Origin: Penicillus capitatus
Taxonomy: Eukaryota > Plantae > Chlorophyta
Assembly: GCA_965649825.1 (NCBI GenBank)
Contig: OZ287704.1
Span: forward strand, 298,101-362,100
DNA length: 64,000 nt
Direction of reading: 5' to 3'
Shown: piece by piece, positions 15,450-47,089 of the stretch
How positions within the stretch are numbered: the stretch's first letter is position 1
Layout: each line of letters opens with the position of its first letter
Translations under genes and position numbers: made by a program
The notes under the pieces: generated by a model
What the model was told of the DNA's origin: nothing
The model's input: the letters and a program-made list of their open reading frames with translations, nothing else
Databases searched by the model: none

Positions 15450-17242
15450 ATGAAGCTTTCTACGGCGCTCCTTTCAGTCGTTGTGCTCCTCGTGCGTCTT
15501 CATGCGAACCTGCGATTGAAAGCCTGGCTAAATGTGGAACGCAGGGGGCCTTGTCAACTGTGTCTGCACGTTCAGTTTTGACTTTGCCAGGTAGACAATC
15601 ACACCCAAACACCGTTCGTCTATGAACCATGGGACGGGGGAGACGTTAAGCTTCGCCGTTTGTCACGTCAATTTCAAAAATTCGTTGCGTCTCGTGTATC
15701 ACATTGAACGGGACGACGATGTGTCGAATTCCGCCCGAGGTTCTCTCCCTTTTTCGAGTCGAAATGGGATAGTCGGTCGGATTAGAAATGCCTGCTCGTT
15801 CTGCCTGTGACTGAGCATCGATACGTTTCTCGCTTATCGTTTGAGGAATGGATAACCGTTAGTAGAATTCCGCAGGCGAATGGTCGATTCACTTGCGCCC
15901 GGAGTCGTAGAAATTTCAAAATCGAGACAACGCATGCTTTGTCGCCCATTGAGGACGCCGATGCCTCTATCGTTTTACTAACTGCCTTCTTAACGCAACC
16001 GTTGTGAATCGATCGCTCTTTCACCACGTTCAGTCATGGGCTAACAATGGTATGATGCTTTGTAGCAGCAAAATGTGGTTATGACAGCTGCGACAAGTGT
16101 GCTTTCCCTCTCAAATGCGTGTCAGAAGAGAAGGACGAATGCAAACGTATGAGTGTTGTCTGTGTCATGATGATGCTTATGTATGTTTGTATTGAGCAGC
16201 TGTTTGCACAATTGTGAAAGACGATTGCAACAAAGGTAAGTTTGTTCCCTACACGTTTGCGTTCTTATCACATGGCTGCAGATTATGTTCCAAAGGAAAA
16301 ATGCGAGACGAAATGCGTAAAGGTGCCGTTCAAAAAGTGCGACAACAAAGAGGTGGAGAAATGTGATGTGAAAATTGAGAAAGTCTGCAAGAACGTGCCC
16401 AAGAAAGAGTGCAAACCTGTGAAGAAGCAAAAATGCGAAGATGTGCCGAAGAAGGTCTGCAAGAAAGTCCCAGATACTGTTTGCAAGAAAGTTCCCGATG
16501 TGAAATGCTACGACGTTCCAAAACAAGAATGCAAATACGTGCCAGACTGCAAAGAGGTCATTGTCCCGAAATGCATCGATGTCCCTGAGAAGAAATGCGA
16601 GAAGAAGCCTGAGAACAAATGCATTTACGTGCCGAAGAAGGTCTGCAAGAAAGTGCCAAAGACAGAGTGCCCGAAGGTTTACAAACCATGCAAGCTGGGG
16701 GACAAATATTGCACATCCCCCAAGTGCATTACCGTCTATAAGGATGAATGCAAGGTCGAGAAGGAGGAAAAGTGCACGCCTGTCTACAAAAACGATTGCA
16801 AAACCGAATATGTGAAGAAATGCGTCGACGAAAAGAAGAAGGTCTGCGACAAGAAGGAGGTCTGCTTCACTAAGACAGAGAAGAAGTGCGAGAAAACTCA
16901 GAAAGACGAATGCAAGACAATCGAGAAAGAAGAATGCGAGACCATTACAGAGACAGTGTGCAAGTATGTCGACGAAGTAGAATGCGATGACAAACTGGTG
17001 CCAAAATGCGAAGACGTTCCGAAAAAGAATTGTTACACTGTTACCGTACCTGACTGCAAGACTGAGTTCAAGGATGAGTGCAAGGAAGAATGCAAGCCCG
17101 TGCCAAGTAAGGACGACATGTCCTGTTGCGTGTGTATGAATAGTGCGTGATGCTCTTTGCAGGTATCCCTAAACCCTGTGAACCGAAGAAGGTTTGCAAA
17201 CCGGTCTGTGTAAAGAAGATTTCTTACTGTTGCAAATACTGA
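15450..17242 (+). CDS. Secreted cysteine-rich C-x7 repeat protein A (K/E/V/P-rich), about 6 exons
   Basis: Signal peptide MKLSTALLSVVVLLGALSTVSA assembled from exons 15450-15491 and 15545-15590. Main exon in ORF 16242-17150 has CKKVPxxV-type repeats; last exon ends KKISYCCKY* (TGA 17240-17242). Confidence 0.85.
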
Positions 17243-18324: not shown

Positions 18325-20515
18325 ATGCGTACGTTCCTGCTTTGGTCCGTTGCATGTATCCTACTGGTATGCTCTTTACCTTCTCGGCATACGCGGCATC
18401 TGAGACTACATTGCTTTAGAGTACAGCCTTCCGCTCCGAGGCACGTACCTTGCAAGGCGAAAAGGATATTGAAATCACTATCACAAGTACGAAAGCCAAG
18501 GCGTTTAGGGCGTCGACCATTAACGGATTGTCGTTGTGTAGCTTGCGACTATTGTAAGCCTGGATACAAATGCGTTGCAAAGAAGTTCCAAGCATGCTCA
18601 GACGGTACGCTTGCTTTGATATTCATAGGCCCGTGAAGAATTCTGTGTGCTGCAGAACAAATCTGCGAAGACGCGGAAGTGTGCGTTCCTGGTAAGCCTT
18701 AGCAGACGCCTCGGTCTTTGGCGGTTACACTTGTGGGTGGTGCAGATCCGAATCCGCCGAAGATTTTCTGCGAACACGAAGAGAAATGCGAGACCGTTTC
18801 CAACAAAACGTGCAAGAAGATTGACATTGAAGAGTGCGAAGAGATTATTGAAAAGAAATGTGGACCAGTTCCTCGCAAGGAGTGCAGACTGGTGGCAAAG
18901 AAAGAAAACTGCCGCATGACTCAGGAGGAAGTGTGCGACAAAGTGCCAGAGCACGTCTGCACGAAAGTCCCGAAGGAGGTCTGTGACAAAGTGCCAGACA
19001 AGGAATGCAAGAAAGTTCCGGAGAAGGTCTGCAAGAAGGTCCCCGAGAAGGTTTGCAAGAAAGTTCCCGAAGACATCTGCAAAAAAGTGCCGGAGGAAGT
19101 GTGCACAAAAGTCCCTGACAAGGAATGCAAGAAAGTTCCTGAGAAAGTTTGCAAGAAAGTTCCGGAAGACGTATGCGAAGATGTGAAGGATCAGGTCTGC
19201 ATTCCCGTTGAAAAGTGTGACAAAGTGCCACGCGAAGTCTGTAAACCAGTCGAGAAGCTCGACTGCCCTACAAAGAAAGTGGAGGAATGTAAAAAGGTCC
19301 CTCAAGAGAAGTGTGACAAGGTGAAGGTGCCATTCTGCAAGACGGTTCCCGAAGAGGAATGCAAGATCGTCAAAACCAAAAAGTGTGATAAGGTTCCAGA
19401 ACAAAAGTGTGAGAAAAAGACGAAGAAGGTGTGCGGAGACCTGGACGATGGCAAGTGTAAGACGATCCCGATTAACATCTGCAAAGAAGTGCCGAAGAAG
19501 GTCTGCAAGCCAGAGCCAAAGAAGTTCTGCGGTGACGAACTGGATGGCAAGAAGGCCGGTTTTGGATGTATCATCAAGGACGATGTCGTCTGCAAAGAAG
19601 TGTATCAAAAAGTTTGCGCAAAGATCGAGAAAGAGATCTGTAAAGGCTACGGATTCCCACTCTGCGAAGATGTCGAGGAGGAAGAGTGTGAGGAGGTGGT
19701 CGTTGACAAATGTGAAGATGTCGATGAGGAAGTGTGTGACATCGTTGACAAGAAAGTGTGTGACGAAGTCGAAGAGGACAAGTGTGAAACGATTGAAGTC
19801 GATGATTGCAAACTCGTTGACAAAACCGACTGCAAGACGATCACGGAGGAGAAATGCGAGACGATCTTGGAAAACAAGTGTACAACGGTGGACGACTGCA
19901 AGGATATCGTGAAGAAAGATTGCAAGAAGGTCGACAAAGACGTGTGCGAAGACATCGAGAAGGATGTCTGTGAAGACATCGAGAAAGATGATTGCAAGTT
20001 TGTGGAGAAAGATGTCTGCGAAAAAGTCGACAAAGACGTGTGCGATGATATCGAGAAGGATGTCTGTGAAGACATCGAGAAAGATGAGTGCAAAGATATC
20101 GAGAGAGATGTGTGCACAACGATTGAGGAAGTCGCCTGCAAAGATATCGAGAAAGAAGTGTGCAGCCTGGTAGACAAAGAGGTTTGCGATTCGAAAGAAG
20201 AACCGGAGTGTAACTATAAAGACTATGAGGAATGTATCGATACAATCAAGAAGGGCAACTGTCAACTTGTTGCCAAAGACGTCTGCAATGATGAGCCCAA
20301 GGAAGTGTGCAAGCAAGTCCCAACTGGCAAGTGTGACATTCCACCCGGTAAGGCCATATCCATGACATCTGGTTCGCTCTGATGATGAATGATCTGTAGC
20401 TGAGAAATGCGGCAATACTGCTTGTGCTTATGGTACAATGTGTGAGATAAAGAATCAATGCCGACCTGCTCACTGCAAAGAGAAGGAAGGATACTGTTGC
20501 CTGCCTCTCTGGTGA
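18325..20515 (+). CDS. Secreted cysteine-rich C-x7 repeat protein B (basic N-half, acidic C-half), about 6 exons
   Basis: Signal peptide MRTFLLWSVACILLSTAFRSEA. Main exon in ORF 18718-20382 has CKKVPEKV then CEDIEKDV repeats; last exon ends EKEGYCCLPLW* (TGA 20513-20515). Confidence 0.87.
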
Positions 20516-22724: not shown

Positions 22725-25700
22725 TCACGGGTGTTGCTTTGGAGACGTCGCTTCGTCCAAAAGGTAAACGAGACCTCTGAAATTGAATCCGCTGTGATTC
22801 GATAGTGACATCTCACATGTACGACTGGTTGAGTAACCATCTTTGCAGTCGGATGGATAGCTCATGTGTTGCAGAGCCGAAGCAGTCAGCTCAGGATATC
22901 GCATGCCACGATCGCCGGCCATCCCGCAGCAGGGAACGCCGCTGGGGACCACCTCGTGTGCACACTTGCTCGCCAGTTCCAAGAAACTGCGTTCGATGCC
23001 CATCTTCTTGGAAGAACAGGGGACATGAACGGCGATGGAATCACGAACCTTCGTAAATTCGAGCTTGTCCATCATGAAGAGCTTGAAGAAAGTGACTGGC
23101 TCATAGAGTGAGAATCTGAGTTTGGAATTGGCACCTCCGCTCTTGATCGTGTAGAGACAGGGGCTCGTGTCACACACGACAGGATATTTGCCATTCTCTG
23201 ATGCTTCGAGAATGGCTTCTTCCATTTCATTTAGTTTGTTCTGGGCAGCTGTTTTGAATCCTCTCGTGTTGAACATCATGCCGCAGCACAGGTTCTTAAC
23301 GCCCTTTGGGTAGATCACCTCAAAATTAGCTTTTTGGAACAGAGAGAGCAGCTTCTCGTGAACTGAAGCCGTTTCGGAGTCGCCATGAGCAGGTCCCATC
23401 ATACGGGTGACACAGGCGGGTATATAAACGACTTTCTGAGGCACTTTGGACGCGGATGGCTGGACTGGATAGGGATCGGGCAATTTGGATGCACCCTTTG
23501 GCATGTAAGGATTCCAGGCGGGAACATAGTTCCCCGACAGCCGATTGAGCGCCTCCGAGATTTTCACCAGCGGCGTGGAACCCATAATCCGATGCGAAAA
23601 GCTCACGGCATTCAGCAACGGTGGCACCATGGTGTTCATGAATCCAAAGTTGTTCGCCAGGGAGATCGAGATGCGATTGGCCGTTGTCTGCGGTTCCAAC
23701 AGATCCACTCTGAGCGATTTAATCAGCTCTCCCGTATTGATCTTCACCGGACACTTCTCTTGACACATGCCATCTGCTGCACACGTCTGCTCGCCCTGAT
23801 ACTCAAAGAGCTCTTCAAATTCCTTCAGCCTCTCCTCCTCCTGCGGCGTCTTCTGTGACAAGGCTCTCAAACGGTTGATCTCACGGAAGACAGTGATACG
23901 CTGACGAGGGGTCAGACTGAGATCTCTGGAAGGACAGTTACTCTCACAGAAACCGCACTCAATGCAACGGTTGACGATGTCGTGAGCTGGAGGACTAGGT
24001 TTTAAGAACTTGACGTGTGTGGAGGGATCTCTGTTGAGCACGACACCTGGATTGAGAATGTTCTCTGGATCGAACAGCGCTTTCAGTTCCCACATTAATT
24101 CATAAGCCTTCGTTCCCCATTCCATCTCCACAAAAGGTGCAACATTCCTCCCTGTTCCGTGCTCTCCTTTCAGCGATCCGCTGTACTTTGTAGCCACGAT
24201 GTAGCTCATCTCTGACATCATGTCTGAAAAACGCTGCACTTCTTCTGTGGTACGAAAGCCTTGGGAGAAGATGAGATGCAGATTGCCTTCCAGCGCGTGT
24301 CCCAGACAGCAAGCATCATTGTAACCATAGCGCTGGAACATGTCAATGAGATCTGAGGTCATGGCTGCGAGATTGTGGACGGGACATGCCACATCTTCAA
24401 TCAACATGGATGTTCCTGTCTCTCTTGCGGCGCCCACCATTGGAATCAATCCCTTGCGCACATTCCAGTATGTTGTGTAGACTTCGACATCCTCAGTGAA
24501 GGGATAGGCATCGAGTGCCTTGAGAGAATTGGCTTGGTTCCCAAAACGGATTTTCCCTTCTTCCAACACATTGCTGACCTCTTTGATGCGTTCTTTCAGA
24601 TCATCGGCCGACCGTCCTCTACACTCAATCAGCAATGCAGCTGCCATAGGGTCTGCGCCATCGATATCTGGTACGAGCTTTGGCATCGTCTCATGCAGCA
24701 TACATTCTCTGAGACATGCACGATCAAAAAGCTCAACGGCATCGACCGATGTGCCGTCTCTCAACAGCGAAGCCGCCCTGCACGACAGCTGCCTCGCTCT
24801 GATCATGTGTAAAAAGAATGGAACGTACGTGCAGGCATCTTCCAAATGCGGAAAGACAATGAACGCTGAAGCTTTGTGTGGCCATTCAGGAACGGTATTG
24901 TACGTTGCTTGAGAGATGAAAGCAAACGTCCCTTCGGATCCAATCATCAGTCTTTTGACAATCTCAATGGGATCAGAAATCGGAAAATCGACCAAAGCAT
25001 TCAGAGAGTAGCCCGTTGTACATTTGATCGAGAACTTCCTCCGAATGAGACTCACCAGTTCTCTATCCTTCTGCACGCGTTGGACGAGCGACACAATTCC
25101 AGCAATCAGCTTCTTGTGACTCTGTAGGAATGCCTCGCGACTGGCTGGGTCACTCGTGTCCAATACTGTTCCATCCGCAAAGACGATACGCATGTCCCTC
25201 AATGTATGATACGTATTCTGCGATACGCCGCAGCACATTCCTGACGAATTGTTGGCCACGATGCCGCCAATCATGCAGCTATCGATCGACGATGGATCCG
25301 GTCCGATCTTGTACTGCACGGGGAGCTTGTGTTTGTTCTGGTATGATTTGAGAATTCGATTCACTTCTCCGCCGATCAGTCCCGGCTGCACCGTGATGGA
25401 ACTCCCATCTTCCTAACAAGACCATGCCGTACTCAGTAGATGACTTTCGTCCAACTACGTGGTCCTTACATGGACTGTATAGTCTCGGAAATTCTTTCCG
25501 GTGTGCGAAAGCTTAAGTAAGACGGAATCAGTGATAGCCTGTCCCGAGAGCGATGTGCCTGCTGCTCGAAAAGTCACTGGGACTTTGTGTTTCGAGGCGA
25601 TGGGCAAAATGCGTCGAATCTCTTCTTCGTTAATCACTTTGACGACGAGTTTGGGATTGAGGCGATAGAAACTGGCGTCGGTGCCGTACGCAAAGGTTCG

Positions 25701-26078
25701 CACTTTGTCCGTGAAACAACGCTTCTCTGGGATGAAATCGCCGATCTCTTTCATGAAGTTCTGGTAGCGGCCATCATCGTGGCGCTCACCGTCGACGTTT
25801 TTGAACACTTTGGTCGCTGGATCCTTTTTGCCAACACTGTCTGCCACAGAGACGGTGCCAAACACGTCCACGGCGACATTCGGAACAAAGACCGAGTGCT
25901 CGAGGGCAGGGTCCTGCTTCGGTGCTGTCATGACGCTTCGTGTGCTCTCTGATATGGGCTCGCGCGACACGGCACTGGTCGAGACGATGCGCATCGACGC
26001 AGTACAGGATGACGACGATGGGTGTCGCAGCTCCTGCGCCAGAGACGCGAGGGTTTTGCTCAACTGCCGGCGCATCAT
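22725..26078 (-). CDS. GYD1: Mitochondrial FAD/Fe-S glycolate (D-lactate) dehydrogenase, chlorophyte GYD1 type (FAD_binding_4, FAD-oxidase C, 4Fe-4S, CCG domains)
   Basis: Arg/Ser-rich presequence MMRRQLSKTLASLA (ATG 26078); YGTDASFYRLNP, FRAAGTSLSGQA, SLKGEHGTGRN, CIECGFCESNCPS, CAADGMCQEKCP and CCGMAGDRG. A probable in-frame 51-nt intron lies near 24770-24820. Confidence 0.9.
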
Positions 26079-26373
26079 TGTCAGTAAAGTGGGAAGAAGA
26101 GCGACAACGCGCTGAAACAGCAAATCTTGTAGAATTTATACTACTGTCATTTGAGGGTCGCGATGATGCGACGGACGTGCATCGAGTCAATCGAACGTCA
26201 TGCTGCAGTAGATGGCGGAGAGACTGGAGGTGTCTTGATATCGTCAATCTCTCGACTGGCCATCCATTGATCGAAAGCGATGGACAGGAGAGCAGGATCG
26301 TCCGTGGCTTGTTGCTTGAGATGATCATACAGACACGTCGACGCATCTAATTAAGAAATTCGGCTCGCTCGCC

Positions 26374-31085: not shown

Positions 31086-34000
31086 ATGAATTCACAGTCA
31101 CGACTCAGGACCTTAATGTCACGACCATTCAATCGATTTTTTACGGACAAACGACAGGAACCAGTGAAGGAGTTCAGTGAAGATGATCAGAAACGTATGC
31201 GGCGGATGTTGAGCAGAGGTATCGTGAGTGTGCGGGAACTGGTTGACCGATACAACAAATCTGACGACACACATCGCAAACTGCTCCTTCCTTGGCTCAA
31301 GGACTTTATCAAATACATTGACGACACAGCAGGTGTGGGTCTGAGAGGTGGTCGATTTCTGGAATACGCAGAACTTGCGAATGTCAGCATCCACAGTGAG
31401 AAAGACAAAGAATTTCTGCAGAATCTCCTTGAAAGCTTGAGCAAGAGAATTAAAGAGGAGAATGATTTTTCGACAGAGCACCTCTTTGACGCATTGCATG
31501 ATGTTCTCATGCGCATGGACCCGAAAGCGTTCGAAAATCGCGGGATTAAATTGAGACAGCTGGTGGACAATTTGATTGCGGCGCTCGAACAGCAAGGGGA
31601 TGTTCCCGATCACTTGCTGGCAAGGCACAGAACTCCCATTTACGCAATCCACCAAGCCCTTTTTCTCCTAAAAAATACGCCGGGATACAAACTGACTGAA
31701 AAGATACAAATAGAGCTGTTTCAGAATATCGAAAAATGCCAAATAGTAGGGATCGAAAAAAACTTCTATCCCTATCACTACCAATGCCGTTTGGTTAAAC
31801 AAGGAATTTTGCGATTAACGGCCAAGACAGAGAAGCCGCCATGGATACAGAGACTCCATGCTTCTCTTTATGCCTGCTGGGGTGGGATGTACTTTCTTCA
31901 CATGCTGAAAGGTCTCTGTGCATTGGATTGCGATCCGAGTGCCGCTGAGGGCGTTATGAAGAACTTAATAGAAGCGCGCAGAAGACTCAACATGTTGACC
32001 ACAGAAGTTTGGTACGATAAACTTCAGGCATATCATGAATCCATCATCAAGAGTCCGATGGACGCTGCTGGTGTCGAATCCGAGACAATTTTGAAAGAAG
32101 TGCCGGAGAAATCGGCGAAGGACCTGCTGTTTGGTATCCTTCGTGAACTCTCGACTGCTGTGCTTTCTGATCACGAATCGTTAAGCAGTGAATCGTCTAC
32201 GCTGGCAAGTACCTGTTTCGAGAGACTGTCTAGCACGCTGGACATGTTGAGCGCCAAAATCGGACAGCAGGATTTCAAGAATGATCCGTCCTTTCTCGAG
32301 CCAGTTCTTAATGCGCTCTGCGAGATATATATTCGTAACAGTGATTATAGAGAGAAAACATGGTCAATTCTGGAACGTCTCGCATTGAATCAAGAATTCC
32401 AGTCTAAAAAGCTGCTGCCTTCTTGGGCGAAAGATGAAGAAACTTTGGAAACGCATATCAGGGATCTCTCGAGGAATCTGAAAGGCAGTCGACACAACAT
32501 TCTCTTCCATGAGGTTCGATCGAATCTTACCTGGTGGGTGGATGATGAAGATTTGACCACGGTCGCGGAGGCATTGAAGAAAGCGTACACTAAATCGGAT
32601 CCCAGCAGCGTAAATCAACACCTATCTCGAAATCGAATCGTCAACAATATCGTTGTGTTCTTGCAGATGCAATCGCCTTCGGTCCACTCAAGGAAGATGG
32701 AGATCGAAGATCTAAGATTTTCCTTTGCTATTCGGGGCGCTGTCTGTTCAGACGAAACGAACATCTTGGCATCGGATGAGAGCCGGCGCTCGTGGTGGCA
32801 GCAGGAAATGCCAAAGAGAATGGAACTTGGCCTTGCAGATATCTTAATAGAGAACAAGATTCCTGGCTTGGCAAAAATCGAATCTGGAAAAGCTCGCAGA
32901 GTTCTCTTGACGGGAAGGCCATGTACTGGGAAGTCGACTTTGGGCAGAAAAATTGCGCGCGGCTGGGCGAATGGCTCTATCATCGAAGGCTTCGACATGG
33001 TGTACGTGCTCGATTCTAAAATGATCTACAGTGGACATGATCGCAGTCAGGATGTATCCTCTGCCCGGAAGACTTTGCAACAGATGACAGCAACAAGTCT
33101 GATATCAGAATTTAGGATAGATTTCACGGATGACTTGGAAAAAGTTATTGATCATAATCTGGATCTCGATACCACTTTGCTTATCATCGACGTCGCAACG
33201 ACAGGGGATTTCATGTATAAATGGATCCAGCAGGCGATGCAACGATCATGCAGTTTGCTCGTGTTACGAGATCCCATCAGTGCGTGGCGTGGTGAGGTGA
33301 AATTCGATGTCGAATTGGAATTGATTGGGCTGACGGACGATCAGATGATTGCCGACATTACTGAGTACTTTGAAGGACGTGCACAAACGGCACGTGACCT
33401 GAAGTCCTTCTTGGGAAGGAGTCCAGATGTCAGGCGAATGGCGCATCATCCATTGACGCTGGAAACGCTGTGCCATATGTGGGATAACTCCGAGAAGGGA
33501 CAAGACCACATTTCAACGATTCCTCGATCTGCCTTGTATTCCAATGTGATCGATTGCATCACTATGAAACGTACTAACGAATTTGGAAGAACGAAGGACC
33601 AGAAGGAATTCCTCTACGATCTGCAGTCGGCAGTTTTCAACCATCTGATCAAGAGCAGCCCTGCGAATTGGACTGGATTCGATGGGGAGGTCCACATCCC
33701 GTCGGTGGCTATCAAGAAAATCACTTCATCGTTGATGCAGCCTAAAGATATGGATGATGTTTTGAAGTTTAAAGCGTATTTCTTTGGAAAGCATATCGCC
33801 AGTATTCAGAGGGGAGACAACAAGAAGGAGAGAGAACATGTAGACGCCTTCTTGATGGATCATATGTACGAGAGTTCGTGCATGACGGCCATGTGCATTG
33901 CCGTTGAAGACACTGCCGATCACGCGCCTACGACGATGGAGCTGCTGTTATCGTTCGTCGAGGAAAAAGCGGCCGAGACCATCGGTCTGCAGCCTCTGCT

Positions 34001-35666
34001 TCTGAAGCTGACACTCATCGAGAGCTTTCTCTCTGCCGATGAAGACAGAAAGAGAACTGTAAAAAACAACGTTTCCTCTATCATCAACGCTTTCATAGCT
34101 TTGATCAAACGGAATGCAGAAGAGGACACGCCGTTGTGGAAAGTTCTGGTGAGACAGCTGGAACAGATGCCATTGGTACGCGAGGCATTTCCCCAAATCG
34201 ATAAAGAATTCAAGAAGAGGTTGAAAAACGGATTGTATCTCTCTCCTTCAAGCTTTGAGTCTGCAGCGAGGCTCTTTCGCGGAGCATCTCCGTTTGGGAA
34301 AGAACTCATGAAAGAATTAATCGAAGACTACCCGACAGCAAGCCCAAATGTGCAACAACAACTGATTTTATGCATCTCCTGCATCCTGACCCACGCTCCA
34401 GATGCTAGCAGTAAACTCATGTCGCACATAAAGCAGTCGTTGGAGGACTCTGCTGATCTCAAAGTTCGTATTGTTGTTCTGGAACGGCTCGATGTATTTA
34501 TCTCGGCATCACCAAAAGACAAGGATGAATTAATAGATTATCTTCAGCGAGCCATCAGGAGTGATAACCAAAGAGTGGCGAAGACAGCCTGGCGACAAAT
34601 CTCAAAATGCATCCAGCTGTTCAGCGATGAACAAAAAGAACAGCTTTGGAAGGAGATGAAGAACAAGGTGAAGAGCGAAGAATCGTTTATGAGGGGAGTT
34701 GTCATGGAACAGATCGGTTGTGTATTCAAGGCGATTCCAAGCAAGAAAATGTTTCTCATCGATCTTCTGCGGAATGCTCTGAATGATAAAGAAGAAGAGG
34801 TCCTGATGGCCGCGCTCGAACAGATTCCTTATTTCCAATCAAATGAGCTGCAGAAGGATGGAGATGGTCATCCTTTGCGCAGAGCATTCTCCAAAAAGAA
34901 TCACAGAATCTGCAAATTTGTGATGCGACAGTTGAAGCATTTTGTCGAAGCCGTACCGAGTGATGAAGCCTTGTGTATGGAGTTACTGAAAGAAGGCTTG
35001 GAGCACAAGAATAAGACGGTCCATGAAACAGCCGTCGACGAAATTCCCAATCTCTGCTCAGCATTGCCCCATAGAAGAGACGACCTTTTCGAATTGTGGA
35101 GAACAACAGTCACTGATGGAGAGTCGAGAAAATTCACAGGCATAAAACAGATCGGTGCGATGACGCGCCTCGTGCCAGAGAGAAAGGACGAAATCCGTGG
35201 CCTGCTGACGAATGGAATACATCACACAGACGAAAATGTGAAACAGCAGGCATTGCTACAAATACCGGAATTTGTTTGTGCGACGGACGAGAAGCTTCCA
35301 GGAGTGCTGGTGTCTCTTAACACTGCACTGAGGGATAAAAGCAGCATTGTGCGGGAAGCGGCGCACAAAGCCATTCAGCAAACGTCATTGGCAGGGCTTA
35401 TCGAACTGGCTTGGATCGATATCCTTGGTTTTAAGCAGGAAATTATCAAAGAGATCGGCTACAGGTTGCTCGACGCCGCAGTAACGGTCACACCTCTGCC
35501 AGATGACAAGGACGGAAATTGCTTAAGATTAACGGCGTACACATGGTCCGGCAAAGTTGAATGGGATCGGCTCAGCTCGAGCGTTAAAGATCTTGTGCGG
35601 TCTATTGTGAAATCCGTAAACGATGAATATCCTGAACTGTGTCAAATGCCTAAAGTATGTGAATGA
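31086..35666 (+). CDS. Intronless 1526-aa STAND/NACHT NTPase with N-terminal helical domain and C-terminal HEAT repeats (NLR-like)
   Basis: RVLLTGRPCTGKSTLGRKIARGWA (Walker A), FDMVYVL, LELIGLTDDQM...YF and MAHHPLTLETLCHMW (NACHT HD1/WH). HEAT-like repeats follow (LKVRIVVLERL, LRNALNDKEEEVLMAALEQI, LNTALRDKSSIVREAAHKAI). Confidence 0.85.
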   Translation: MNSQSRLRTLMSRPFNRFFTDKRQEPVKEFSEDDQKRMRRMLSRGIVSVRELVDRYNKSDDTHRKLLLPWLKDFIKYIDDTAGVGLRGGRFLEYAELANVSIHSEKDKEFLQNLLESLSKRIKEENDFSTEHLFDALHDVLMRMDPKAFENRGIKLRQLVDNLIAALEQQGDVPDHLLARHRTPIYAIHQALFLLKNTPGYKLTEKIQIELFQNIEKCQIVGIEKNFYPYHYQCRLVKQGILRLTAKTEKPPWIQRLHASLYACWGGMYFLHMLKGLCALDCDPSAAEGVMKNLIEARRRLNMLTTEVWYDKLQAYHESIIKSPMDAAGVESETILKEVPEKSAKDLLFGILRELSTAVLSDHESLSSESSTLASTCFERLSSTLDMLSAKIGQQDFKNDPSFLEPVLNALCEIYIRNSDYREKTWSILERLALNQEFQSKKLLPSWAKDEETLETHIRDLSRNLKGSRHNILFHEVRSNLTWWVDDEDLTTVAEALKKAYTKSDPSSVNQHLSRNRIVNNIVVFLQMQSPSVHSRKMEIEDLRFSFAIRGAVCSDETNILASDESRRSWWQQEMPKRMELGLADILIENKIPGLAKIESGKARRVLLTGRPCTGKSTLGRKIARGWANGSIIEGFDMVYVLDSKMIYSGHDRSQDVSSARKTLQQMTATSLISEFRIDFTDDLEKVIDHNLDLDTTLLIIDVATTGDFMYKWIQQAMQRSCSLLVLRDPISAWRGEVKFDVELELIGLTDDQMIADITEYFEGRAQTARDLKSFLGRSPDVRRMAHHPLTLETLCHMWDNSEKGQDHISTIPRSALYSNVIDCITMKRTNEFGRTKDQKEFLYDLQSAVFNHLIKSSPANWTGFDGEVHIPSVAIKKITSSLMQPKDMDDVLKFKAYFFGKHIASIQRGDNKKEREHVDAFLMDHMYESSCMTAMCIAVEDTADHAPTTMELLLSFVEEKAAETIGLQPLLLKLTLIESFLSADEDRKRTVKNNVSSIINAFIALIKRNAEEDTPLWKVLVRQLEQMPLVREAFPQIDKEFKKRLKNGLYLSPSSFESAARLFRGASPFGKELMKELIEDYPTASPNVQQQLILCISCILTHAPDASSKLMSHIKQSLEDSADLKVRIVVLERLDVFISASPKDKDELIDYLQRAIRSDNQRVAKTAWRQISKCIQLFSDEQKEQLWKEMKNKVKSEESFMRGVVMEQIGCVFKAIPSKKMFLIDLLRNALNDKEEEVLMAALEQIPYFQSNELQKDGDGHPLRRAFSKKNHRICKFVMRQLKHFVEAVPSDEALCMELLKEGLEHKNKTVHETAVDEIPNLCSALPHRRDDLFELWRTTVTDGESRKFTGIKQIGAMTRLVPERKDEIRGLLTNGIHHTDENVKQQALLQIPEFVCATDEKLPGVLVSLNTALRDKSSIVREAAHKAIQQTSLAGLIELAWIDILGFKQEIIKEIGYRLLDAAVTVTPLPDDKDGNCLRLTAYTWSGKVEWDRLSSSVKDLVRSIVKSVNDEYPELCQMPKVCE

Positions 35667-43632: not shown

Positions 43633-44583
43633 TCAGCTGTCTGAAACAGCCGAGATGATCATTCCATCCATCGCAGCTCCATTCAGATGCTCTGCTGCAC
43701 GTTCGGCGTCCTGACCTACGATGTAATTCACAAATGCCATTCCTGTGCACATCTGTGCCATATCCAGTCCAATGTTGATACTCGAAATCGCTCCATATTG
43801 CGCAAACTCTCTATAAAGCCTCAATTCCGTCGCTGTCGGTGGCAGGTTACACACAAAGACTGCCTTGGGCGAAGTGATCTCTTCTTCTGGACTGCTCTCC
43901 AGTTTCGGCTCCACACCATTATTCATCGTGGTGTCGCAGTCAAACGACAGACAAGAAGCAGCTGTTCGGCATAGGGCCTGATGTCGATAGGCGATCGATG
44001 CCGATACAATATTCTTGCGAAACGGCATACGTCGGCAGCGAAACTTCTGTTCCTTAACGGTTGAGTACTTAACGGTCATTGGACCAAACCCTTCAACAGT
44101 CGCACCATTCAACTGCGCAATGGTTTCACGTGCCTCGTCGATCGAACTGTAGCGCACGAGGCCCACACCGCCACGCGCGGGGATGGCACTGTTCAGTACG
44201 CGAACGGACACGACGATGCCAAACTGCGAAAAGTACTCCGTCAACTGCTCCGATCCCCAATAGCTAGGAAATCCTCGAACAAAGAGATTGTCGTTTTCAA
44301 CCAGCGCCTTGTCGAGGAGGTTCTTCTTTGGGTCGACGTCGAATTCGGCTTCACGCACTTCGAGGCACTGACCCCCAATAACGCGCTTGTCCATAGTCCG
44401 AATCGCGCTCGAGGCTTCGCTTTGAGATGCGAACTTGACAAATCCGAGTCGTTTATCGCCAATGTGGCGCGGTTCGAGGATCTTCACGGAGACAATGGCG
44501 CCATAGCGTTCGAAGAGATAGCGCAGATCTTCCGTGTCGAATCCGACGGGGACGCCACGAATATAAACGTTGCTGTGCGGCAT
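43633..44583 (-). CDS. Intronless three-RRM RNA-binding protein (ELAV/Hu-like layout)
   Basis: RRM1 NVYIRGVP...GFVKF, RRM2 NLFVRGFP...GLVRY, linker, RRM3 VFVCNLP...AFVNY; single 316-aa ORF. Confidence 0.85.
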   Translation of the reverse strand: MPHSNVYIRGVPVGFDTEDLRYLFERYGAIVSVKILEPRHIGDKRLGFVKFASQSEASSAIRTMDKRVIGGQCLEVREAEFDVDPKKNLLDKALVENDNLFVRGFPSYWGSEQLTEYFSQFGIVVSVRVLNSAIPARGGVGLVRYSSIDEARETIAQLNGATVEGFGPMTVKYSTVKEQKFRCRRMPFRKNIVSASIAYRHQALCRTAASCLSFDCDTTMNNGVEPKLESSPEEEITSPKAVFVCNLPPTATELRLYREFAQYGAISSINIGLDMAQMCTGMAFVNYIVGQDAERAAEHLNGAAMDGMIISAVSDS

Positions 44584-44694: not shown

Positions 44695-47089
44695 ATGTTA
44701 CGTGTCGCGTCTGCTCTGCGACGTGCGCCGTCCTCATACTTAGTACATCGTCTATCCACTACGAGGAATTGTGTAAGGATGTATGCTGCACACAACAACG
44801 ACCTCGTGGCGCCACAGACGCCAAACGCCAAGACAGAAGTGAAAAACGCCGCCGGATTGCTGGACGCCAAACAAACATACTACGAGAAACGTGTCTCGCT
44901 TTTTGAGCAGTACTACGAACGCGAGCTACAAAAGGTCGAAGCTGCGAAAGAGGCAGCGATTGCTCTGAAAGTCGTTTTGCCGGACGGGACGGAGAAAGAG
45001 GGGGTATCTGGGGTAACAACGCCTTTGGATATCGCTGGGGAGATTTCCAAGAGCTTGGCCAAGAAATCGATGGTGGCCAAAGTGAACGGGGAGGAATGGG
45101 ATGTCACCCGGCCTCTAACAGGGGACTGCTCTCTGGAGCTTTTTGGTTTTGAAACGCCTGAAGGGAAAGAGGCAAGCCGATGGCGTTGTACTTCCACTTA
45201 CTGGTGTGAGACGTTGTATGACATCTAGGCATTTTGGCATTCGAGTTCTCATGTACTGGGCCTTGCATTGGAGCTGCAATTTGGAGTGGACTTGACAGTG
45301 GGGCCGCCGATTGAAGAAGGGTTTTACTACGATTGCTTCATGGGAGACAAAACACTGCATCCAGATGAATTGCTGCTGCTGGAAAATCGAATGATGGATG
45401 CGATAAAGGCAAAGCATCCACTGCAAAGAATTGTTGTCTCTCGACAGGAAGCACTTGCCATGTTTCAGGAAAACAAATTCAAAGTACGGTCCATGCTCTC
45501 GTTTTTCAAACATGGATAGAGGAGTTTTGTGTGACGGTGTGCAGATTGAGATATTGAATGGACTGGATCCTGATGCGACCATCAGTGTCTACCGCTGCGG
45601 ACCGATGGTGGATCTATGCACCGGTCCGCACATCCCGAACACAGACCTCATCAAAGTAGTGTTGCTCCATATCCGCGACAGCCATTGGGCAATGCCATGT
45701 GCTCTCTAGGCTGTTCACGTGATTTCCGCATCCCGGGCCTTCTGGCGCGCCGATGTTAACAGAGAGCCTCTCCAACGCGTCTATGGTGTGACGTTTCCAG
45801 ATATCAAACAACTAAAAGAGTTTAAACGTCGCATGGAAGAGGCCAAGAAACGGGATCATCGTTTGCTCGGCACCAATCAGGAGCTGTTCTTCTTCCATCA
45901 ATGGTCTCCAGGAAGCTGTTTCTTCCAACCAGCCGGCACAAGAATCTACAATGCATTGCTCGAACTCATCCGAGAGAAGTACTGGGATTACGAATACGAT
46001 GAAGTCTTGACTCCCAGTATCTTCAATTTCGAGTTGTGGAAGACATCTGGTCATGCCTCGCACTACAGAGAGAACATGTTTGCGTTCGACGTAGAGAAGC
46101 AGGAGTACGGATTGAAGCCTATGAACTGTCCAGGGCACTGTTTGGTGTTCCGTCAGGCGCGGCGTTCTTATCGAGAGCTTCCGCTTCGGGTAGCAGAATT
46201 CGGTGTCCTGCATCGAAATGAATACAGTGGAGCACTGCAAGGACTGACACGTGTTCGGAAATTTGTCCAGGATGATGCACACATCTTCTGTCGTCCGGAT
46301 CAGGTGCAGCAAGAAGTGGAAGACTTTCTCACGTTCATGGACGAAGTGTACACCATTTTTGGACTCGAGTACACATTGGGTCTCTCCACACGTCCTGAGG
46401 GATATATGGGAACGTCTGAGCTATGGGACCAGGCCGAGCAATCCTTGAAGGATGCCCTGGAGAAATCTGGACGTCCGTGGGAGCTCAACCCAGGAGACGG
46501 CGCTTTCTACGGCCCCAAGATCGACATCACTGTCTTCGATGCTCTCCGTCGAAAGTATCAGTGCGCCACCTGTCAACTCGATTTTCAGCTACCCATTCAG
46601 TTCAAACTGGAGTATCAGACAGAATCCAGCATGGAACGTCCAGTCATCGTGCATCGTGCCATTTTGGGATCACTGGAGCGCATGTACGCCATTCTGATCG
46701 AACACTTTGGCGGTAAATGGCCTCTGTGGCTCAGTCCACGCCAAGTCATGATCGTTCCCGTTTCCGAAGCGACAGCCGACTATGCAGCAGAGGTGAGGAA
46801 GAAGATCCGTAAGGCGAGGATTTTGGCCGAAATCGACGATAGCAGTGCCACGATGCAGAAGAAAGTCCGTTCAGCTCAGCTGGCACAATTCAATTATATT
46901 CTGGTCGTCGGTGAGCAAGAGAAGGAGGCAAAGACGGTCAATGTCCGCACAAGAGACAACGTTGTGCACGGAATGCACTCTGTCGATGCTTTTGTCGAGA
47001 TTGTGTGCAAGGAGAAGCTCGAACGCCATTTGGCTTCGGCCTTTGTTTCAAAGGAGCAGCCCGAGACGTCGACCACGCCATCGAACTAG
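44695..47089 (+). CDS. TARS: Threonyl-tRNA synthetase, eukaryotic cytosolic type, with N-terminal presequence
   Basis: TGS domain, [50 protein letters not shown] and anticodon-binding domain. Confidence 0.96.

What the first reader, a model, noticed from the sequence alone, without database searches (positions are those of the whole stretch)
15450..17242. Protein A has palindromic cysteine spacing: a predicted disulfide-zippered giant beta-hairpin
Seen in the spliced translation: the gaps between Cys read outward from the central turn (CPKVYKP-C-KLGDKY-C-TSPK-C) are N-side 7x5, 5, 7x9, 3, 9, 6, 3, 7 and C-side 7x5, 5, 7x9, 3, 9, 5, 3, 6. The two arms are near-perfect mirror images, including the odd 5-, 3- and 9-residue rungs. 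My count is 48 Cys in the mature chain, an even number. K-rich rungs (KKVPDVK, KPVKKQK) face E/D-rich rungs (EKTQKDE, KYVDEVE). Inference: the chain folds back as one antiparallel hairpin stapled by about 22-24 cross-strand disulfides. At about 0.33 nm per residue and about 150 residues per arm this is a roughly 50-nm rod, secreted as a wall, adhesive or wound-plug fibre. I know no named algal family with this design.
Basis: partly seen in the sequence, partly recalled or inferred. Interest (0 to 1): 0.9.

Follow-up and report, generated by a model that had tools for sequence, protein, structure and literature searches.

The report
Giant disulfide-laddered beta-hairpin protein
A green-alga gene encodes a secreted protein whose cysteines are spaced as a mirror image around a central turn, and several independent tests indicate it folds into one very long two-stranded ribbon stapled by about 23 disulfide rungs, a design shared by an undescribed protein family in copepods and predatory bacteria.

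Summary
They form a near-perfect palindrome around CKLGDKYC, reached by 3 of 20,000 shuffles.

- A larger tandem paralogue, B (18325-20515), is mirrored too. Its odd 5-residue rung sits at rung 14 on both arms (rung 6 in A), and each arm is exactly 293 residues.
- 222 library proteins resemble A. Of 126 non-redundant ones, 46 have exactly mirrored arms with their own odd rungs; 1.6 are expected by chance.
- Charges co-vary only in the mirrored register. Rung position 5 on one arm against position 5 on the other gives 205 opposite and 11 same-charge pairs. In A the count is 8:1, in B 17:0.
- Proline sits almost only at even offsets from Cys.
- AlphaFold2 on a copepod homologue alignment gives two paired 100-residue strands (pLDDT 84).

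There is no Pfam, NCBIfam, PDB or literature match.

Untested: the disulfide chemistry, monomer hairpin versus antiparallel dimer, the exon-1 join, and the function. A direct model of A failed (pLDDT 36).

The parts
15450..15495 (+). Protein A exon 1: start codon and hydrophobic N-terminus MKLSTALLSVVVLLV (probable signal peptide). The 3' end is tentative.
   Evidence: ATG and hydrophobic stretch read. Exon 2 requires a phase-1 donor; the candidates are 15496, 15553 and 15562. The signal-peptide call is by inspection only.
16066..16146 (+). Protein A exon 2: outermost N-terminal Cys rungs (Cys1-Cys5).
   Evidence: Acceptor ttgtag and donor GTATGA. Searches show the Cys frame running from this acceptor to the donor. 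My reading of the sequence places a TGA at 16053-16055 in this frame, just upstream of the acceptor.
16200..16235 (+). Protein A exon 3: rungs KPV / TIVKDD (Cys6-Cys7).
   Evidence: gagcag acceptor and GTAAGT donor. The KPV rung mirrors the KPV rung of exon 5.
16282..17106 (+). Protein A exon 4: the bulk of both arms and the turn (Cys8-Cys43).
   Evidence: Continuous reading frame within the 16242-17150 ORF. Gaps 3, 7x9, 5, 7x5, 6, 6, 4, 7x5, 5, 7x9, 3. Diverged 24-nt direct repeats and no inverted DNA repeat.
16689..16712 (+). Central turn: Cys25-KLGDKY-Cys26, the mirror centre.
   Evidence: Best mirror centre at gap 24; coordinates.
16098..16691 (+). N arm (Cys3 to Cys25, introns included): basic, Val-Pro type rungs such as KKVPDVK, net charge +17.
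16710..17233 (+). C arm (Cys26 to Cys48, one intron included): Thr/Tyr/Glu type rungs such as KTEYVKK, net charge +2. Proposed partners satisfy Cys i + Cys j = 51.
17163..17242 (+). Protein A exon 5: outermost C-terminal rungs, the ...SYCCKY end and the stop codon.
   Evidence: ttgcag acceptor. Without this splice the frame runs on to ...MSCCVCMNSA*, as the unspliced ORF shows, and by my reading that ending replaces the mirrored 9, 5, 3, 6 rungs.
18325..20515 (+). Tandem paralogue, protein B. Exons 18542-18604, 18656-18691, 18746-20347, 20400-20515, with a probable start at 18325. It has 79 Cys, centre CGDELDGKKAGFGC at 19528-19569, and two arms of 293 residues each.
   Evidence: Mirror 7x13, 5, 7x12 is exact on both sides. 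N arm net charge +10, C arm -45.

Best explanation
Protein A is a secreted protein of a chlorophyte green alga. After removal of a short signal peptide, the chain folds back on itself at Cys25-KLGDKY-Cys26. The N arm (basic, C-x-K-V-P-x-x-x rungs) and the C arm (C-x-T-[VI]-[YTE]-x-x-x rungs) run antiparallel and in register as one two-stranded beta-ribbon.

Cys recur mostly every 8 residues, always at an even period within the arms. They therefore all lie on one face, at non-hydrogen-bonded sites, opposite their mirror partners (Cys i with Cys 51-i). About 23 cross-strand disulfides result, plus one local Cys1-Cys2 bond.

The other face carries Val/Ile at rung positions 3 and 7. Position 5 holds a charged residue that forms a diagonal salt bridge with position 5 of the facing rung. 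Proline occupies only outward-pointing (even) positions. There it costs no inter-strand hydrogen bond, and it should block edge-to-edge sheet growth.

The product would be a thin, stiff, highly charged rod of roughly 50 nm, and about 95 nm for paralogue B. Both termini lie at one end and the turn at the other.

Shown here: the mirror, its recurrence, the register-specific covariation, the proline rule, and the predicted fold of a relative. Inferred: disulfide formation, that pairing is within one chain, stiffness, and the role. I take the role to be a structural or spacer rod of the extracellular matrix or wall.
For: - Gap palindrome in A, reached by 3 of 20,000 shuffles.
- Paralogue B is mirrored exactly for 26 rungs per arm. 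Its 5-residue rung is at rung 14 on both arms (rung 6 in A), a Gly-containing rung is at rung 4 on both arms, and both arms are 293 residues.
- Relatives: 222 representatives at E<=1e-3 and 29 at E<=1e-10. Of 126 non-redundant hits with at least 12 Cys, 46 have exact mirrored arms of at least 5 rungs that include a non-7 rung; 1.6 are expected from shuffling.
- Arm length co-varies. The Bdellovibrionota-type series [11, 7xn, 5, 7, turn, 7, 5, 7xn, 12] has n = 7 to 14, always equal on both arms. Copepod rungs of 15, 11 and 19 residues recur at mirrored places on both arms; I read them as 8-residue units that lost a Cys on both arms together.
- Net charge of mirrored rungs correlates at r = -0.26 (n = 517). 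At rung shifts of +-1 to +-5 the value is -0.04 to +0.15. The mirrored register gives the lower charge product in 42 of 48 proteins (p = 1e-7).
- Position-specific covariance is strongest for position 5 with position 5 (a5-b5, -0.456 against -0.08 in controls), then a6-b2, a2-b6 and a3-b7.
- The a5-b5 pair is opposite-charged 205 times and same-charged 11 times in register. Shifted registers give about 27% opposite and 20% same. Within A the count is 8:1, and a2-b6 is 7:0. Within B, a5-b5 is 17:0, a6-b2 10:0 and a2-b6 15:0.
- Proline is at 0-1% at odd rung positions and 2-57% at even ones. Position 3 is Val/Ile/Leu in 50-92% of rungs. In A, proline is at even offsets 24 times and odd 5 times, and 39 of 47 Cys periods are even. 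The odd cases lie at the turn or the termini.
- AlphaFold2 on 14 aligned copepod domains gives mean pLDDT 83.9 with strands 11-110 and 117-216. From the invariant Cys positions, I compute that the strand ends and all nine Cys pairs sum to 227, so they share one mirror centre.
- No inverted DNA repeat underlies the pattern.
Against: - AlphaFold2 on A's own main exon, run without an alignment, gave no usable model (pLDDT 36). The confident model is of a distant relative (E about 1e-3 to A).
- No close relative of A or B was found, so covariation for A rests on its own 14 seven-residue rung pairs plus pooled distant relatives.
- The similarity scores could be inflated by the shared 8-residue periodicity, so common descent with the copepod and bacterial proteins is not established.
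- A's mirror is imperfect at the turn (6 against 4) and at the ends (6/5, 7/6, 5/0).
- The mirror and the covariation are equally expected for two chains paired head-to-tail.
- No data here show oxidised Cys, secretion, expression, or any function.
Confidence: 0.72

Rival explanations
1. Antiparallel homodimer or domain-swapped polymer. The N arm of one chain pairs with the C arm of another chain, giving a two-chain ladder of double length or an open-ended fibre instead of a closed hairpin.
For: A palindromic Cys spacing and mirrored charge covariation are exactly what head-to-tail pairing of identical chains also needs. Family members with 78-266-residue inserts between the arms show that the arms need not be joined by a tight turn. 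Extra terminal Cys (the C-terminal ...YCC in both A and B) could make intermolecular links.
Against: The centre of most members is a short loop of 2-20 residues. The loops read here contain Gly, Asp, Tyr or Pro (KLGDKY, GDELDGKKAGFG, HGYGYHQE) and are closed by a Cys pair. That suits a turn. Intramolecular pairing is strongly favoured by effective concentration during folding. AlphaFold2 folds the single chain as a hairpin, although it was only offered a monomer.
Confidence: 0.12
2. Beads on a string. Each Cys bonds its sequence neighbour, or the Cys stay reduced or bind metal. The chain would then be a series of small C-x7-C loops or a flexible Cys-rich polymer, and the mirror would reflect only similar end effects on a repeat array.
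For: C-x7-C arrays arise easily by tandem duplication; diverged 24-nt repeats are present. A's own structure prediction was disordered.
Against: This does not explain several observations. Odd rungs and lost Cys always occur at the same distance from the centre on both arms in dozens of proteins. Charges co-vary only in the mirrored register and at specific positions. Proline avoids odd positions completely. B's two arms have identical total length.
Confidence: 0.06
3. Gene-model or chance artefact. The mirror in A is produced by the chosen exon joins or by chance in a low-complexity repeat.
For: The outer mirrored rungs (9, 3, 6/5, 3) depend on three unverified splice joins, and exon 1 is uncertain.
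Against: The inner mirror (3, 7x9, 5, 7x5 | 7x5, 5, 7x9, 3) lies in one uninterrupted exon. B repeats it within a single 1.6-kb exon. The shuffle tests give 3 of 20,000 for A and 46 observed against 1.6 expected for the family.
Confidence: 0.02

Closest known systems
Cystine-ladder beta-hairpin peptides (theta-defensins; protegrin-, tachyplesin-, arenicin-type antimicrobial peptides)
   Same: Two antiparallel strands are joined by a turn and held by parallel cross-strand disulfides at mirror-related Cys. The literature uses 'cysteine ladder' for exactly this motif (papers listed; structural details are from my own knowledge).
   Different: Those peptides are 16-25 residues long with 1-3 disulfides, spaced every 2-4 residues. 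They are cationic, membrane-active effectors. A has about 23 rungs at 8-residue spacing over about 150 residues per arm, follows a repeat grammar, and has no sequence similarity to any chain in the PDB.
Long beta-hairpins of beta-pore-forming proteins and phage tail knobs (the Foldseek hits)
   Same: These are the only solved structures Foldseek matched to the predicted copepod hairpin: very long two-stranded hairpins.
   Different: TM-scores are 0.19 or lower and rmsd values are 9-86 A. To my knowledge those hairpins exist only as staves of oligomeric barrels, are amphipathic, lack disulfide ladders, and hang from globular domains. A's rungs are charged at several positions on both faces, and A has no other domain.
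Single-layer beta-sheet rod proteins of bacterial surfaces (SasG/Aap G5-E repeats, 'periscope' proteins) and the beta-ribbon stalk of bovine ultralong CDR H3
   Same: Thin beta-sheet rods without a hydrophobic core serve as stiff spacers, with length set by repeat number. This parallels the n = 7 to 14 arm series in the bacterial relatives and the members that carry a large insert at the hairpin tip. The comparison is from my own knowledge and was not tested.
   Different: Those rods are three-stranded or much shorter, are not disulfide-laddered, and in SasG the termini lie at opposite ends. No sequence or profile match was found.
Small proline-rich / late cornified envelope proteins (octapeptide Cys-Pro-Lys-Val repeats)
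   Same: An 8-residue repeat rich in Cys, Pro, Lys and Val in a cross-linked structural protein. A giant-virus 'late cornified envelope-like proline-rich protein' was a weak structural hit (28% identity over 69 columns).
   Different: No Pfam match was found. To my knowledge those proteins are cytosolic, have no mirrored arms, and are cross-linked through Gln/Lys-rich ends by transglutaminase. A has a signal peptide and few Gln.

Membership tests
Unnamed mirror-Cys hairpin family detected here (copepod LOC131885432 / TCAL_12911 / Tk03869 types; Bdellovibrionota type) | Cys spacing palindromic about a short loop or insert, with odd rungs mirrored | tested here: met
   A. B. Relatives.
Unnamed mirror-Cys hairpin family detected here (copepod LOC131885432 / TCAL_12911 / Tk03869 types; Bdellovibrionota type) | 8-residue rung grammar: Pro only at even offsets from Cys, Val/Ile at position 3, charged residue at position 5, Val-rich position 7 | tested here: met
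   The compositions of A, B and 46 other proteins agree. In A, Pro is at even offsets 24 times and odd 5 times.
Unnamed mirror-Cys hairpin family detected here (copepod LOC131885432 / TCAL_12911 / Tk03869 types; Bdellovibrionota type) | Opposite charges at position 5 of mirrored rungs, only in the mirrored register | tested here: met
   A 8:1, B 17:0, pooled 205:11 opposite to same; shifted registers about 27% to 20%.
Unnamed mirror-Cys hairpin family detected here (copepod LOC131885432 / TCAL_12911 / Tk03869 types; Bdellovibrionota type) | Common descent (sequence homology beyond shared periodicity) | tested here: inconclusive
   phmmer E-values reach 4.6e-26, but the queries are periodic and compositionally biased. 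Arm order differs: the Val-Pro arm is first in A and B and last in copepods. Convergence is not excluded.
Cystine-ladder beta-hairpin peptides (theta-defensin, protegrin, tachyplesin types) | Antiparallel two-stranded hairpin with mirror-related Cys facing each other | tested here: met
   Mirror, register-specific covariation, proline parity, and the AlphaFold2 model of a relative.
Cystine-ladder beta-hairpin peptides (theta-defensin, protegrin, tachyplesin types) | Cys actually oxidised to cross-strand disulfides | not testable with these tools
   Needs non-reducing mass spectrometry. Only the secretory N-terminus and the mirrored long rungs that I read as paired loss of Cys bear on it.
Cystine-ladder beta-hairpin peptides (theta-defensin, protegrin, tachyplesin types) | Small size (about 16-25 residues, 1-3 disulfides) and sequence relatedness | tested here: not met
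   A is 355 aa with 48 Cys. No PDB chain matched at E<=10.
Beta-pore-forming proteins (Foldseek hits) | Amphipathic membrane-spanning hairpin attached to an oligomerising globular domain | tested here: not met
   TM <= 0.19. The rungs are charged at several positions on both faces. No flanking domain and no Pfam match.
Small proline-rich / cornifin proteins | Match to the family profile, Gln/Lys-rich transglutaminase ends, cytosolic location | tested here: not met
   No Pfam family at E<=10. A has a hydrophobic secretory N-terminus and few Gln.

The most novel reading that the evidence does not exclude
A and B belong to an undescribed class of secreted proteins found in green algae, copepods and Bdellovibrionota. 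Each domain would be a single two-stranded beta-ribbon, roughly 30 nm long in the copepod model and about 50 and 95 nm in A and B. It has no hydrophobic core. Its stability would come from a ladder of about 9 to about 40 disulfides, together with diagonal salt bridges. Its length would be tuned in evolution by adding or deleting rungs on both arms at once. It would serve as a molecular rod or stalk: a pure rod in A, and a carrier of a tip insert or flanking domains elsewhere.
Probability: 0.6. Interest if true: 0.88.

Novelty: new variant of a known kind. Interest (0 to 1): 0.82.

Why it matters
If the fold is confirmed, this is a structural-protein architecture with no solved or described counterpart. 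It would be a core-less, nanometre-thin rod, tens of nanometres long, built from one hairpin and a disulfide ladder.

It would:
- give a simple, testable sequence grammar (mirror Cys spacing, proline parity, the position-5/position-5 salt bridge) for annotating 'dark' proteins of copepods, predatory bacteria and algae that currently match no family
- offer a natural template for length-programmable protein nanorods
- provide a test case for oxidative folding, since about 23 or more disulfides must form in register
- show that mirror symmetry in Cys spacing is a usable search key for proteins of this kind

For the alga itself, it points to an unrecognised component of the secreted matrix of a Bryopsis-related chlorophyte.

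Tried and rejected
- AlphaFold2 on A's main exon without an alignment gave pLDDT 36, which is uninformative.
- There were no hits for A or its relatives in Pfam, or for A in PDB sequences. NCBIfam gave no hits for the bacterial relatives.
- Six literature searches on palindromic Cys spacing, disulfide ladders, CX7C repeats, beta-ribbons and Bryopsis wound plugs found nothing about this family.
- The search for close relatives or orthologous loci of A and B in JGI metagenome contigs found none.
- The look-up of a long window ORF in assemblies found nothing. The RRM gene located the source contig.
- The scan of genome contigs failed with the bacterial alignment and with P0062. A neighbouring ABC-F gene then placed P0001 in Bdellovibrionota.
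- Rejected: a DNA palindrome as the cause. There are no inverted repeats, and the reverse complement of a Cys codon does not encode Cys.
- Rejected: my own first reading of B as having a two-rung offset between arms. Cumulative lengths show a local one-residue slip, (8,7,7) against (7,7,8), and equal arms of 293 residues.
- Rejected: the 42-nt exon 1 ending at the good GTGCGT donor (15492). Its phase does not fit exon 2.
- Rejected: the 605-aa antisense ORF 18598-20415 as a gene. It is a shadow of B's codon-biased repeats.
Full report
**What is in the sequence.** The window is eukaryotic, about 50% G+C, with long ORFs split by short introns. It is part of a 593-kb contig of an ENA metagenome assembly (ERZ25074695). 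Its threonyl-tRNA synthetase exon is closest, among named proteins, to chlorophyte green algae: Bryopsis sp. 73%, then Tetradesmus, Parachlorella and Chlorella at about 70%.

**Gene model of protein A.** At 15450-17242 on the + strand, GT..AG joins that preserve the Cys-rich frame give five exons: 15450-15495, 16066-16146, 16200-16235, 16282-17106 and 17163-17242. The product is 355 aa with 48 Cys, 25% Lys, 13% Val, 12% Glu and 9% Pro. Only the exon 1/2 join is insecure. Exon 2 must be entered in phase 1, and the available donors (15496 GTCTTC, 15553, 15562) are weak. The N-terminus MKLSTALLSVVVLLV looks like a signal peptide; this is by inspection only.

The Cys-to-Cys gaps are [4,2,5,7,3,6,9,3,7x9,5,7x5,6,6,4,7x5,5,7x9,3,9,5,3,6,0]. 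With a free centre, 3 of 20,000 shuffles of the gap order do as well. The inner part of the mirror lies in one uninterrupted exon. The outer rungs (9, 3 and so on) cross splice junctions at both ends, so the mirror and the gene model support each other. No inverted DNA repeat exists, only diverged 24-nt direct repeats. The reverse complement of a Cys codon is not a Cys codon. The symmetry is therefore a property of the protein, not of the DNA.

**A second copy in the window.** A six-frame scan for C-x(3-9)-C arrays found one more locus, immediately downstream. By my reading, protein B (about 18325-20515) has the same exon layout, intron phases and ...YCC C-terminus as A. It is larger, with 79 Cys and a centre at CGDELDGKKAGFGC.

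- Outward from the centre, both arms of B read 7x13, 5, 7x12 exactly.
- The odd 5-residue rung is at rung 14 on both arms of B and at rung 6 on both arms of A.
- A Gly-containing rung sits at rung 4 on both arms of B.
- Further out, each arm has one 8-residue rung, arranged (8,7,7) against (7,7,8). This is a one-residue slip that re-registers after 25 residues.
- Each arm is exactly 293 residues from the central Cys to the last Cys.
- Each paralogue's N arm matches its own C arm and not the other paralogue's, which points to self-pairing.

**The pattern is a family trait.** A word-indexed search gave 14 weak, unnamed hits without Pfam domains. An exhaustive phmmer search of 1.84 billion representatives gave 222 hits at E<=1e-3 and 29 at E<=1e-10. 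Their Cys gaps are strikingly palindromic, each with its own irregularities:

- [19,7,15,7,11,7,15,7 | 8 | mirror]. This type comes from copepods, named only 'uncharacterized protein LOC131885432' or 'hypothetical protein TCAL_12911' of Tigriopus californicus. Tk03869, probably of Tigriopus kingsejongensis, has exactly mirrored arms of 21 rungs.
- [11,7x7,5,7x4 | 78-266-residue insert | 7x4,5,7x7,11].
- [9,8,7x5,9,8 | 8 | mirror].
- A series [11,7xn,5,7 | 4-9 | 7,5,7xn,12] with n from 7 to 14, always equal on both arms.

One member of that last series lies on a bacterial-looking contig whose ABC-F gene is 70% identical to Oligoflexia/Bdellovibrionota genomes.

Of 126 non-redundant hits with at least 12 Cys, 46 have exactly mirrored arms of at least 5 rungs that include a non-7 rung. 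Shuffling the gap order predicts 1.6. Many of the rest look like fragments, judging by their short lengths. The long copepod rungs (15, 11, 19) recur at mirrored places on both arms. I read them as 8-residue units that lost a Cys at the mirrored place on both arms together. That is the evolutionary behaviour expected of disulfide partners.

**Direct test of arm-to-arm contact.** I used the Cys as anchors and compared mirrored rungs in 48 proteins with a well-defined centre, A and B included.

- Net charges of mirrored rungs are anticorrelated (r = -0.26, n = 517). Pairing each rung with a partner shifted by 1-5 rungs gives r between -0.04 and +0.15.
- The mirrored register has the lower charge product in 42 of 48 proteins (p = 1e-7).
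- Resolved by position in 427 seven-residue rung pairs, the signal is sharp. Write a_k for rung position k on the N arm and b_m for position m on the C arm. The a5-b5 covariance is -0.456 against -0.08 in shifted controls. Then come a6-b2 (-0.20 against -0.02), a2-b6 and a3-b7.
- The a5-b5 pair is oppositely charged 205 times and like-charged 11 times in register. Out of register, about 27% are opposite and 20% are like.
- In A alone, a5-b5 is 8:1 and a2-b6 is 7:0. In B, a5-b5 is 17:0, a6-b2 is 10:0 and a2-b6 is 15:0. The shifted registers of the same proteins show no such bias.

**What geometry this implies.** If Cys faces Cys, residue a_k lies opposite b_(8-k). The even-position signals (2/6, 6/2) are then lateral neighbours on the Cys face. 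The odd-position signals (5/5, 3/7) are the (i, j+2) diagonal on the other face. I derived this geometry by my own reasoning, starting from a recollection of Gellman-type hairpin studies of lateral and diagonal pairings. It is what a right-twisted two-stranded antiparallel ribbon should show when the Cys occupy non-hydrogen-bonded sites. It was not tested against coordinates here.

The composition agrees:

- Proline is at 0-1% at odd rung positions and 2-57% at even ones. At even positions the backbone NH points away from the partner strand.
- Position 3 is Val/Ile/Leu in 50-92% of rungs, position 7 is Val-rich, and position 5 is charged.
- In A, 24 of 29 prolines and 39 of 47 Cys periods are even. 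The exceptions are at the turn or the termini. In B the counts are 33 of 36 and 69 of 78.

**Structure prediction.** A's main exon alone gave no usable model (pLDDT 36). An alignment of 14 copepod domains gave mean pLDDT 83.9 and exactly two secondary-structure elements, strands 11-110 and 117-216, around a GYGYH turn. From the invariant Cys positions, I compute that the strand ends and all nine Cys pairs sum to 227. The predicted hairpin axis therefore coincides with the Cys mirror. I could not read the coordinates, so S-S distances were not checked.

Foldseek found only generic long hairpins: staves of pore-forming proteins and phage tail knobs at TM <= 0.19 in the PDB, and TM < 0.3 in BFVD. 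Pfam, NCBIfam and PDB sequence searches were empty. So were six literature searches, apart from the 'cysteine ladder' of theta-defensins.

**Best explanation and limits.** A is most likely a secreted, core-less, two-stranded beta-ribbon of about 50 nm (B about 95 nm). About 23 mirror-pair disulfides (Cys i with Cys 51-i) would staple it, and diagonal salt bridges would reinforce it. Proline on the free edge of one strand would discourage lateral aggregation. Both termini lie at one end.

- I put in-register antiparallel arm contact at about 0.9.
- I put a closed intramolecular hairpin, rather than a head-to-tail dimer or polymer, at about 0.8. Sequence data cannot separate these two.
- I put actual disulfide formation at about 0.8.
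- The role as a structural or spacer rod of the wall or matrix is an inference from shape, charge and secretion, at about 0.4.
- Whether the algal, copepod and bacterial proteins share ancestry or converged on the same grammar is open. Arm order differs between them, and the HMMER scores are helped by periodicity.

**Comparison and novelty.** It works like a cystine-ladder beta-hairpin peptide, scaled up 10- to 30-fold and made periodic. It is not a member of that family or of any other known family that I could test. I rate it a new variant of a known kind, because cross-strand disulfide stapling of a hairpin is an established principle. As a protein family and as an architecture it appears undescribed.

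Noticed in passing
window 18325-20515 (+): Tandem paralogue B is a roughly 600-aa version of the same design, with 79 Cys. Its N arm has net charge +10 and its C arm -45, and the two arms are exactly 293 residues each. In B the start codon (18325) is in the same frame as the Cys-rich exon 2 with no stop between them, so intron 1 may be absent or may use a GC donor at the position homologous to A's.
   Followed up: partly
window 18598-20415 (-): A 605-aa open frame lies antisense to B. It is an Phe/Leu-rich shadow ORF created by B's Lys/Glu/Asp/Val codon repeats, and it is almost certainly not a gene.
   Followed up: no
P0001 on L002 5334-7187; P0049, P0053, P0059, P0062 and others: A coherent bacterial family has a signal peptide, a conserved lead-in (..VPDTCYR.VQ.G), a mirror hairpin whose arms vary from 7 to 14 rungs in step, and then a C-terminal domain of about 200 aa that matches no family. 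A neighbouring gene on the P0001 contig places it in Oligoflexia/Bdellovibrionota (predatory bacteria).
   Followed up: partly
P0055 (807 aa; marine eukaryote transcript catalogue): A mirror hairpin with arms of 14 rungs or more is fused N-terminally to a flavin amine oxidase domain (PF01593, E = 2e-49). This suggests the rod can carry an enzyme.
   Followed up: no
P0004, P0050, P0052, P0084, P0091, P0093, P0097, P0139, P0140: In these 'split' members the two mirrored arms are separated by 78-266 residues or more of charged or Lys/Ala/Leu-rich sequence. If the arms pair, the insert sits at the tip of the rod, giving a stalk-and-knob layout.
   Followed up: no
P0057, P0003, P0115: Some proteins show more than one mirror centre, for example P0057: ...7,15,15,16,7 | 19 | 7,15,15,15,7... 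and then 7x5,13,7 | 9 | 7,13,7x5. These look like tandem hairpins.
   Followed up: no
P0013 family (Tigriopus and marine metatranscriptomes): In copepods the hairpin domain is flanked by Gly/His/Tyr-rich and (A/S)PSY-type low-complexity repeats, and it is preceded by a conserved PGPYG..PNFKC motif. The flanks resemble cuticle or matrix proteins. All members are annotated 'uncharacterized'.
   Followed up: partly
P0054 (614 aa): About 30 near-identical CxDIPSPE octapeptide rungs follow an unrelated N-terminal domain of about 390 aa, with no second arm in the sequence as recorded. This is either a fragment or a one-armed variant.
   Followed up: no
window 22725-26123 (-), 31086-35666 (+), 43633-44583 (-), 44695-47089 (+): The neighbouring genes look unrelated to A and B. 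By my reading of the ORF translations they are an FAD-linked oxidase with Fe-S motifs (D-lactate dehydrogenase-like) and a 1526-aa single-exon protein with a P-loop-like motif; these two were not scanned against any family library. The other two, an RRM protein and threonyl-tRNA synthetase split by introns, are backed by Pfam hits. No wall or secretion genes were recognised next to A and B.
   Followed up: no
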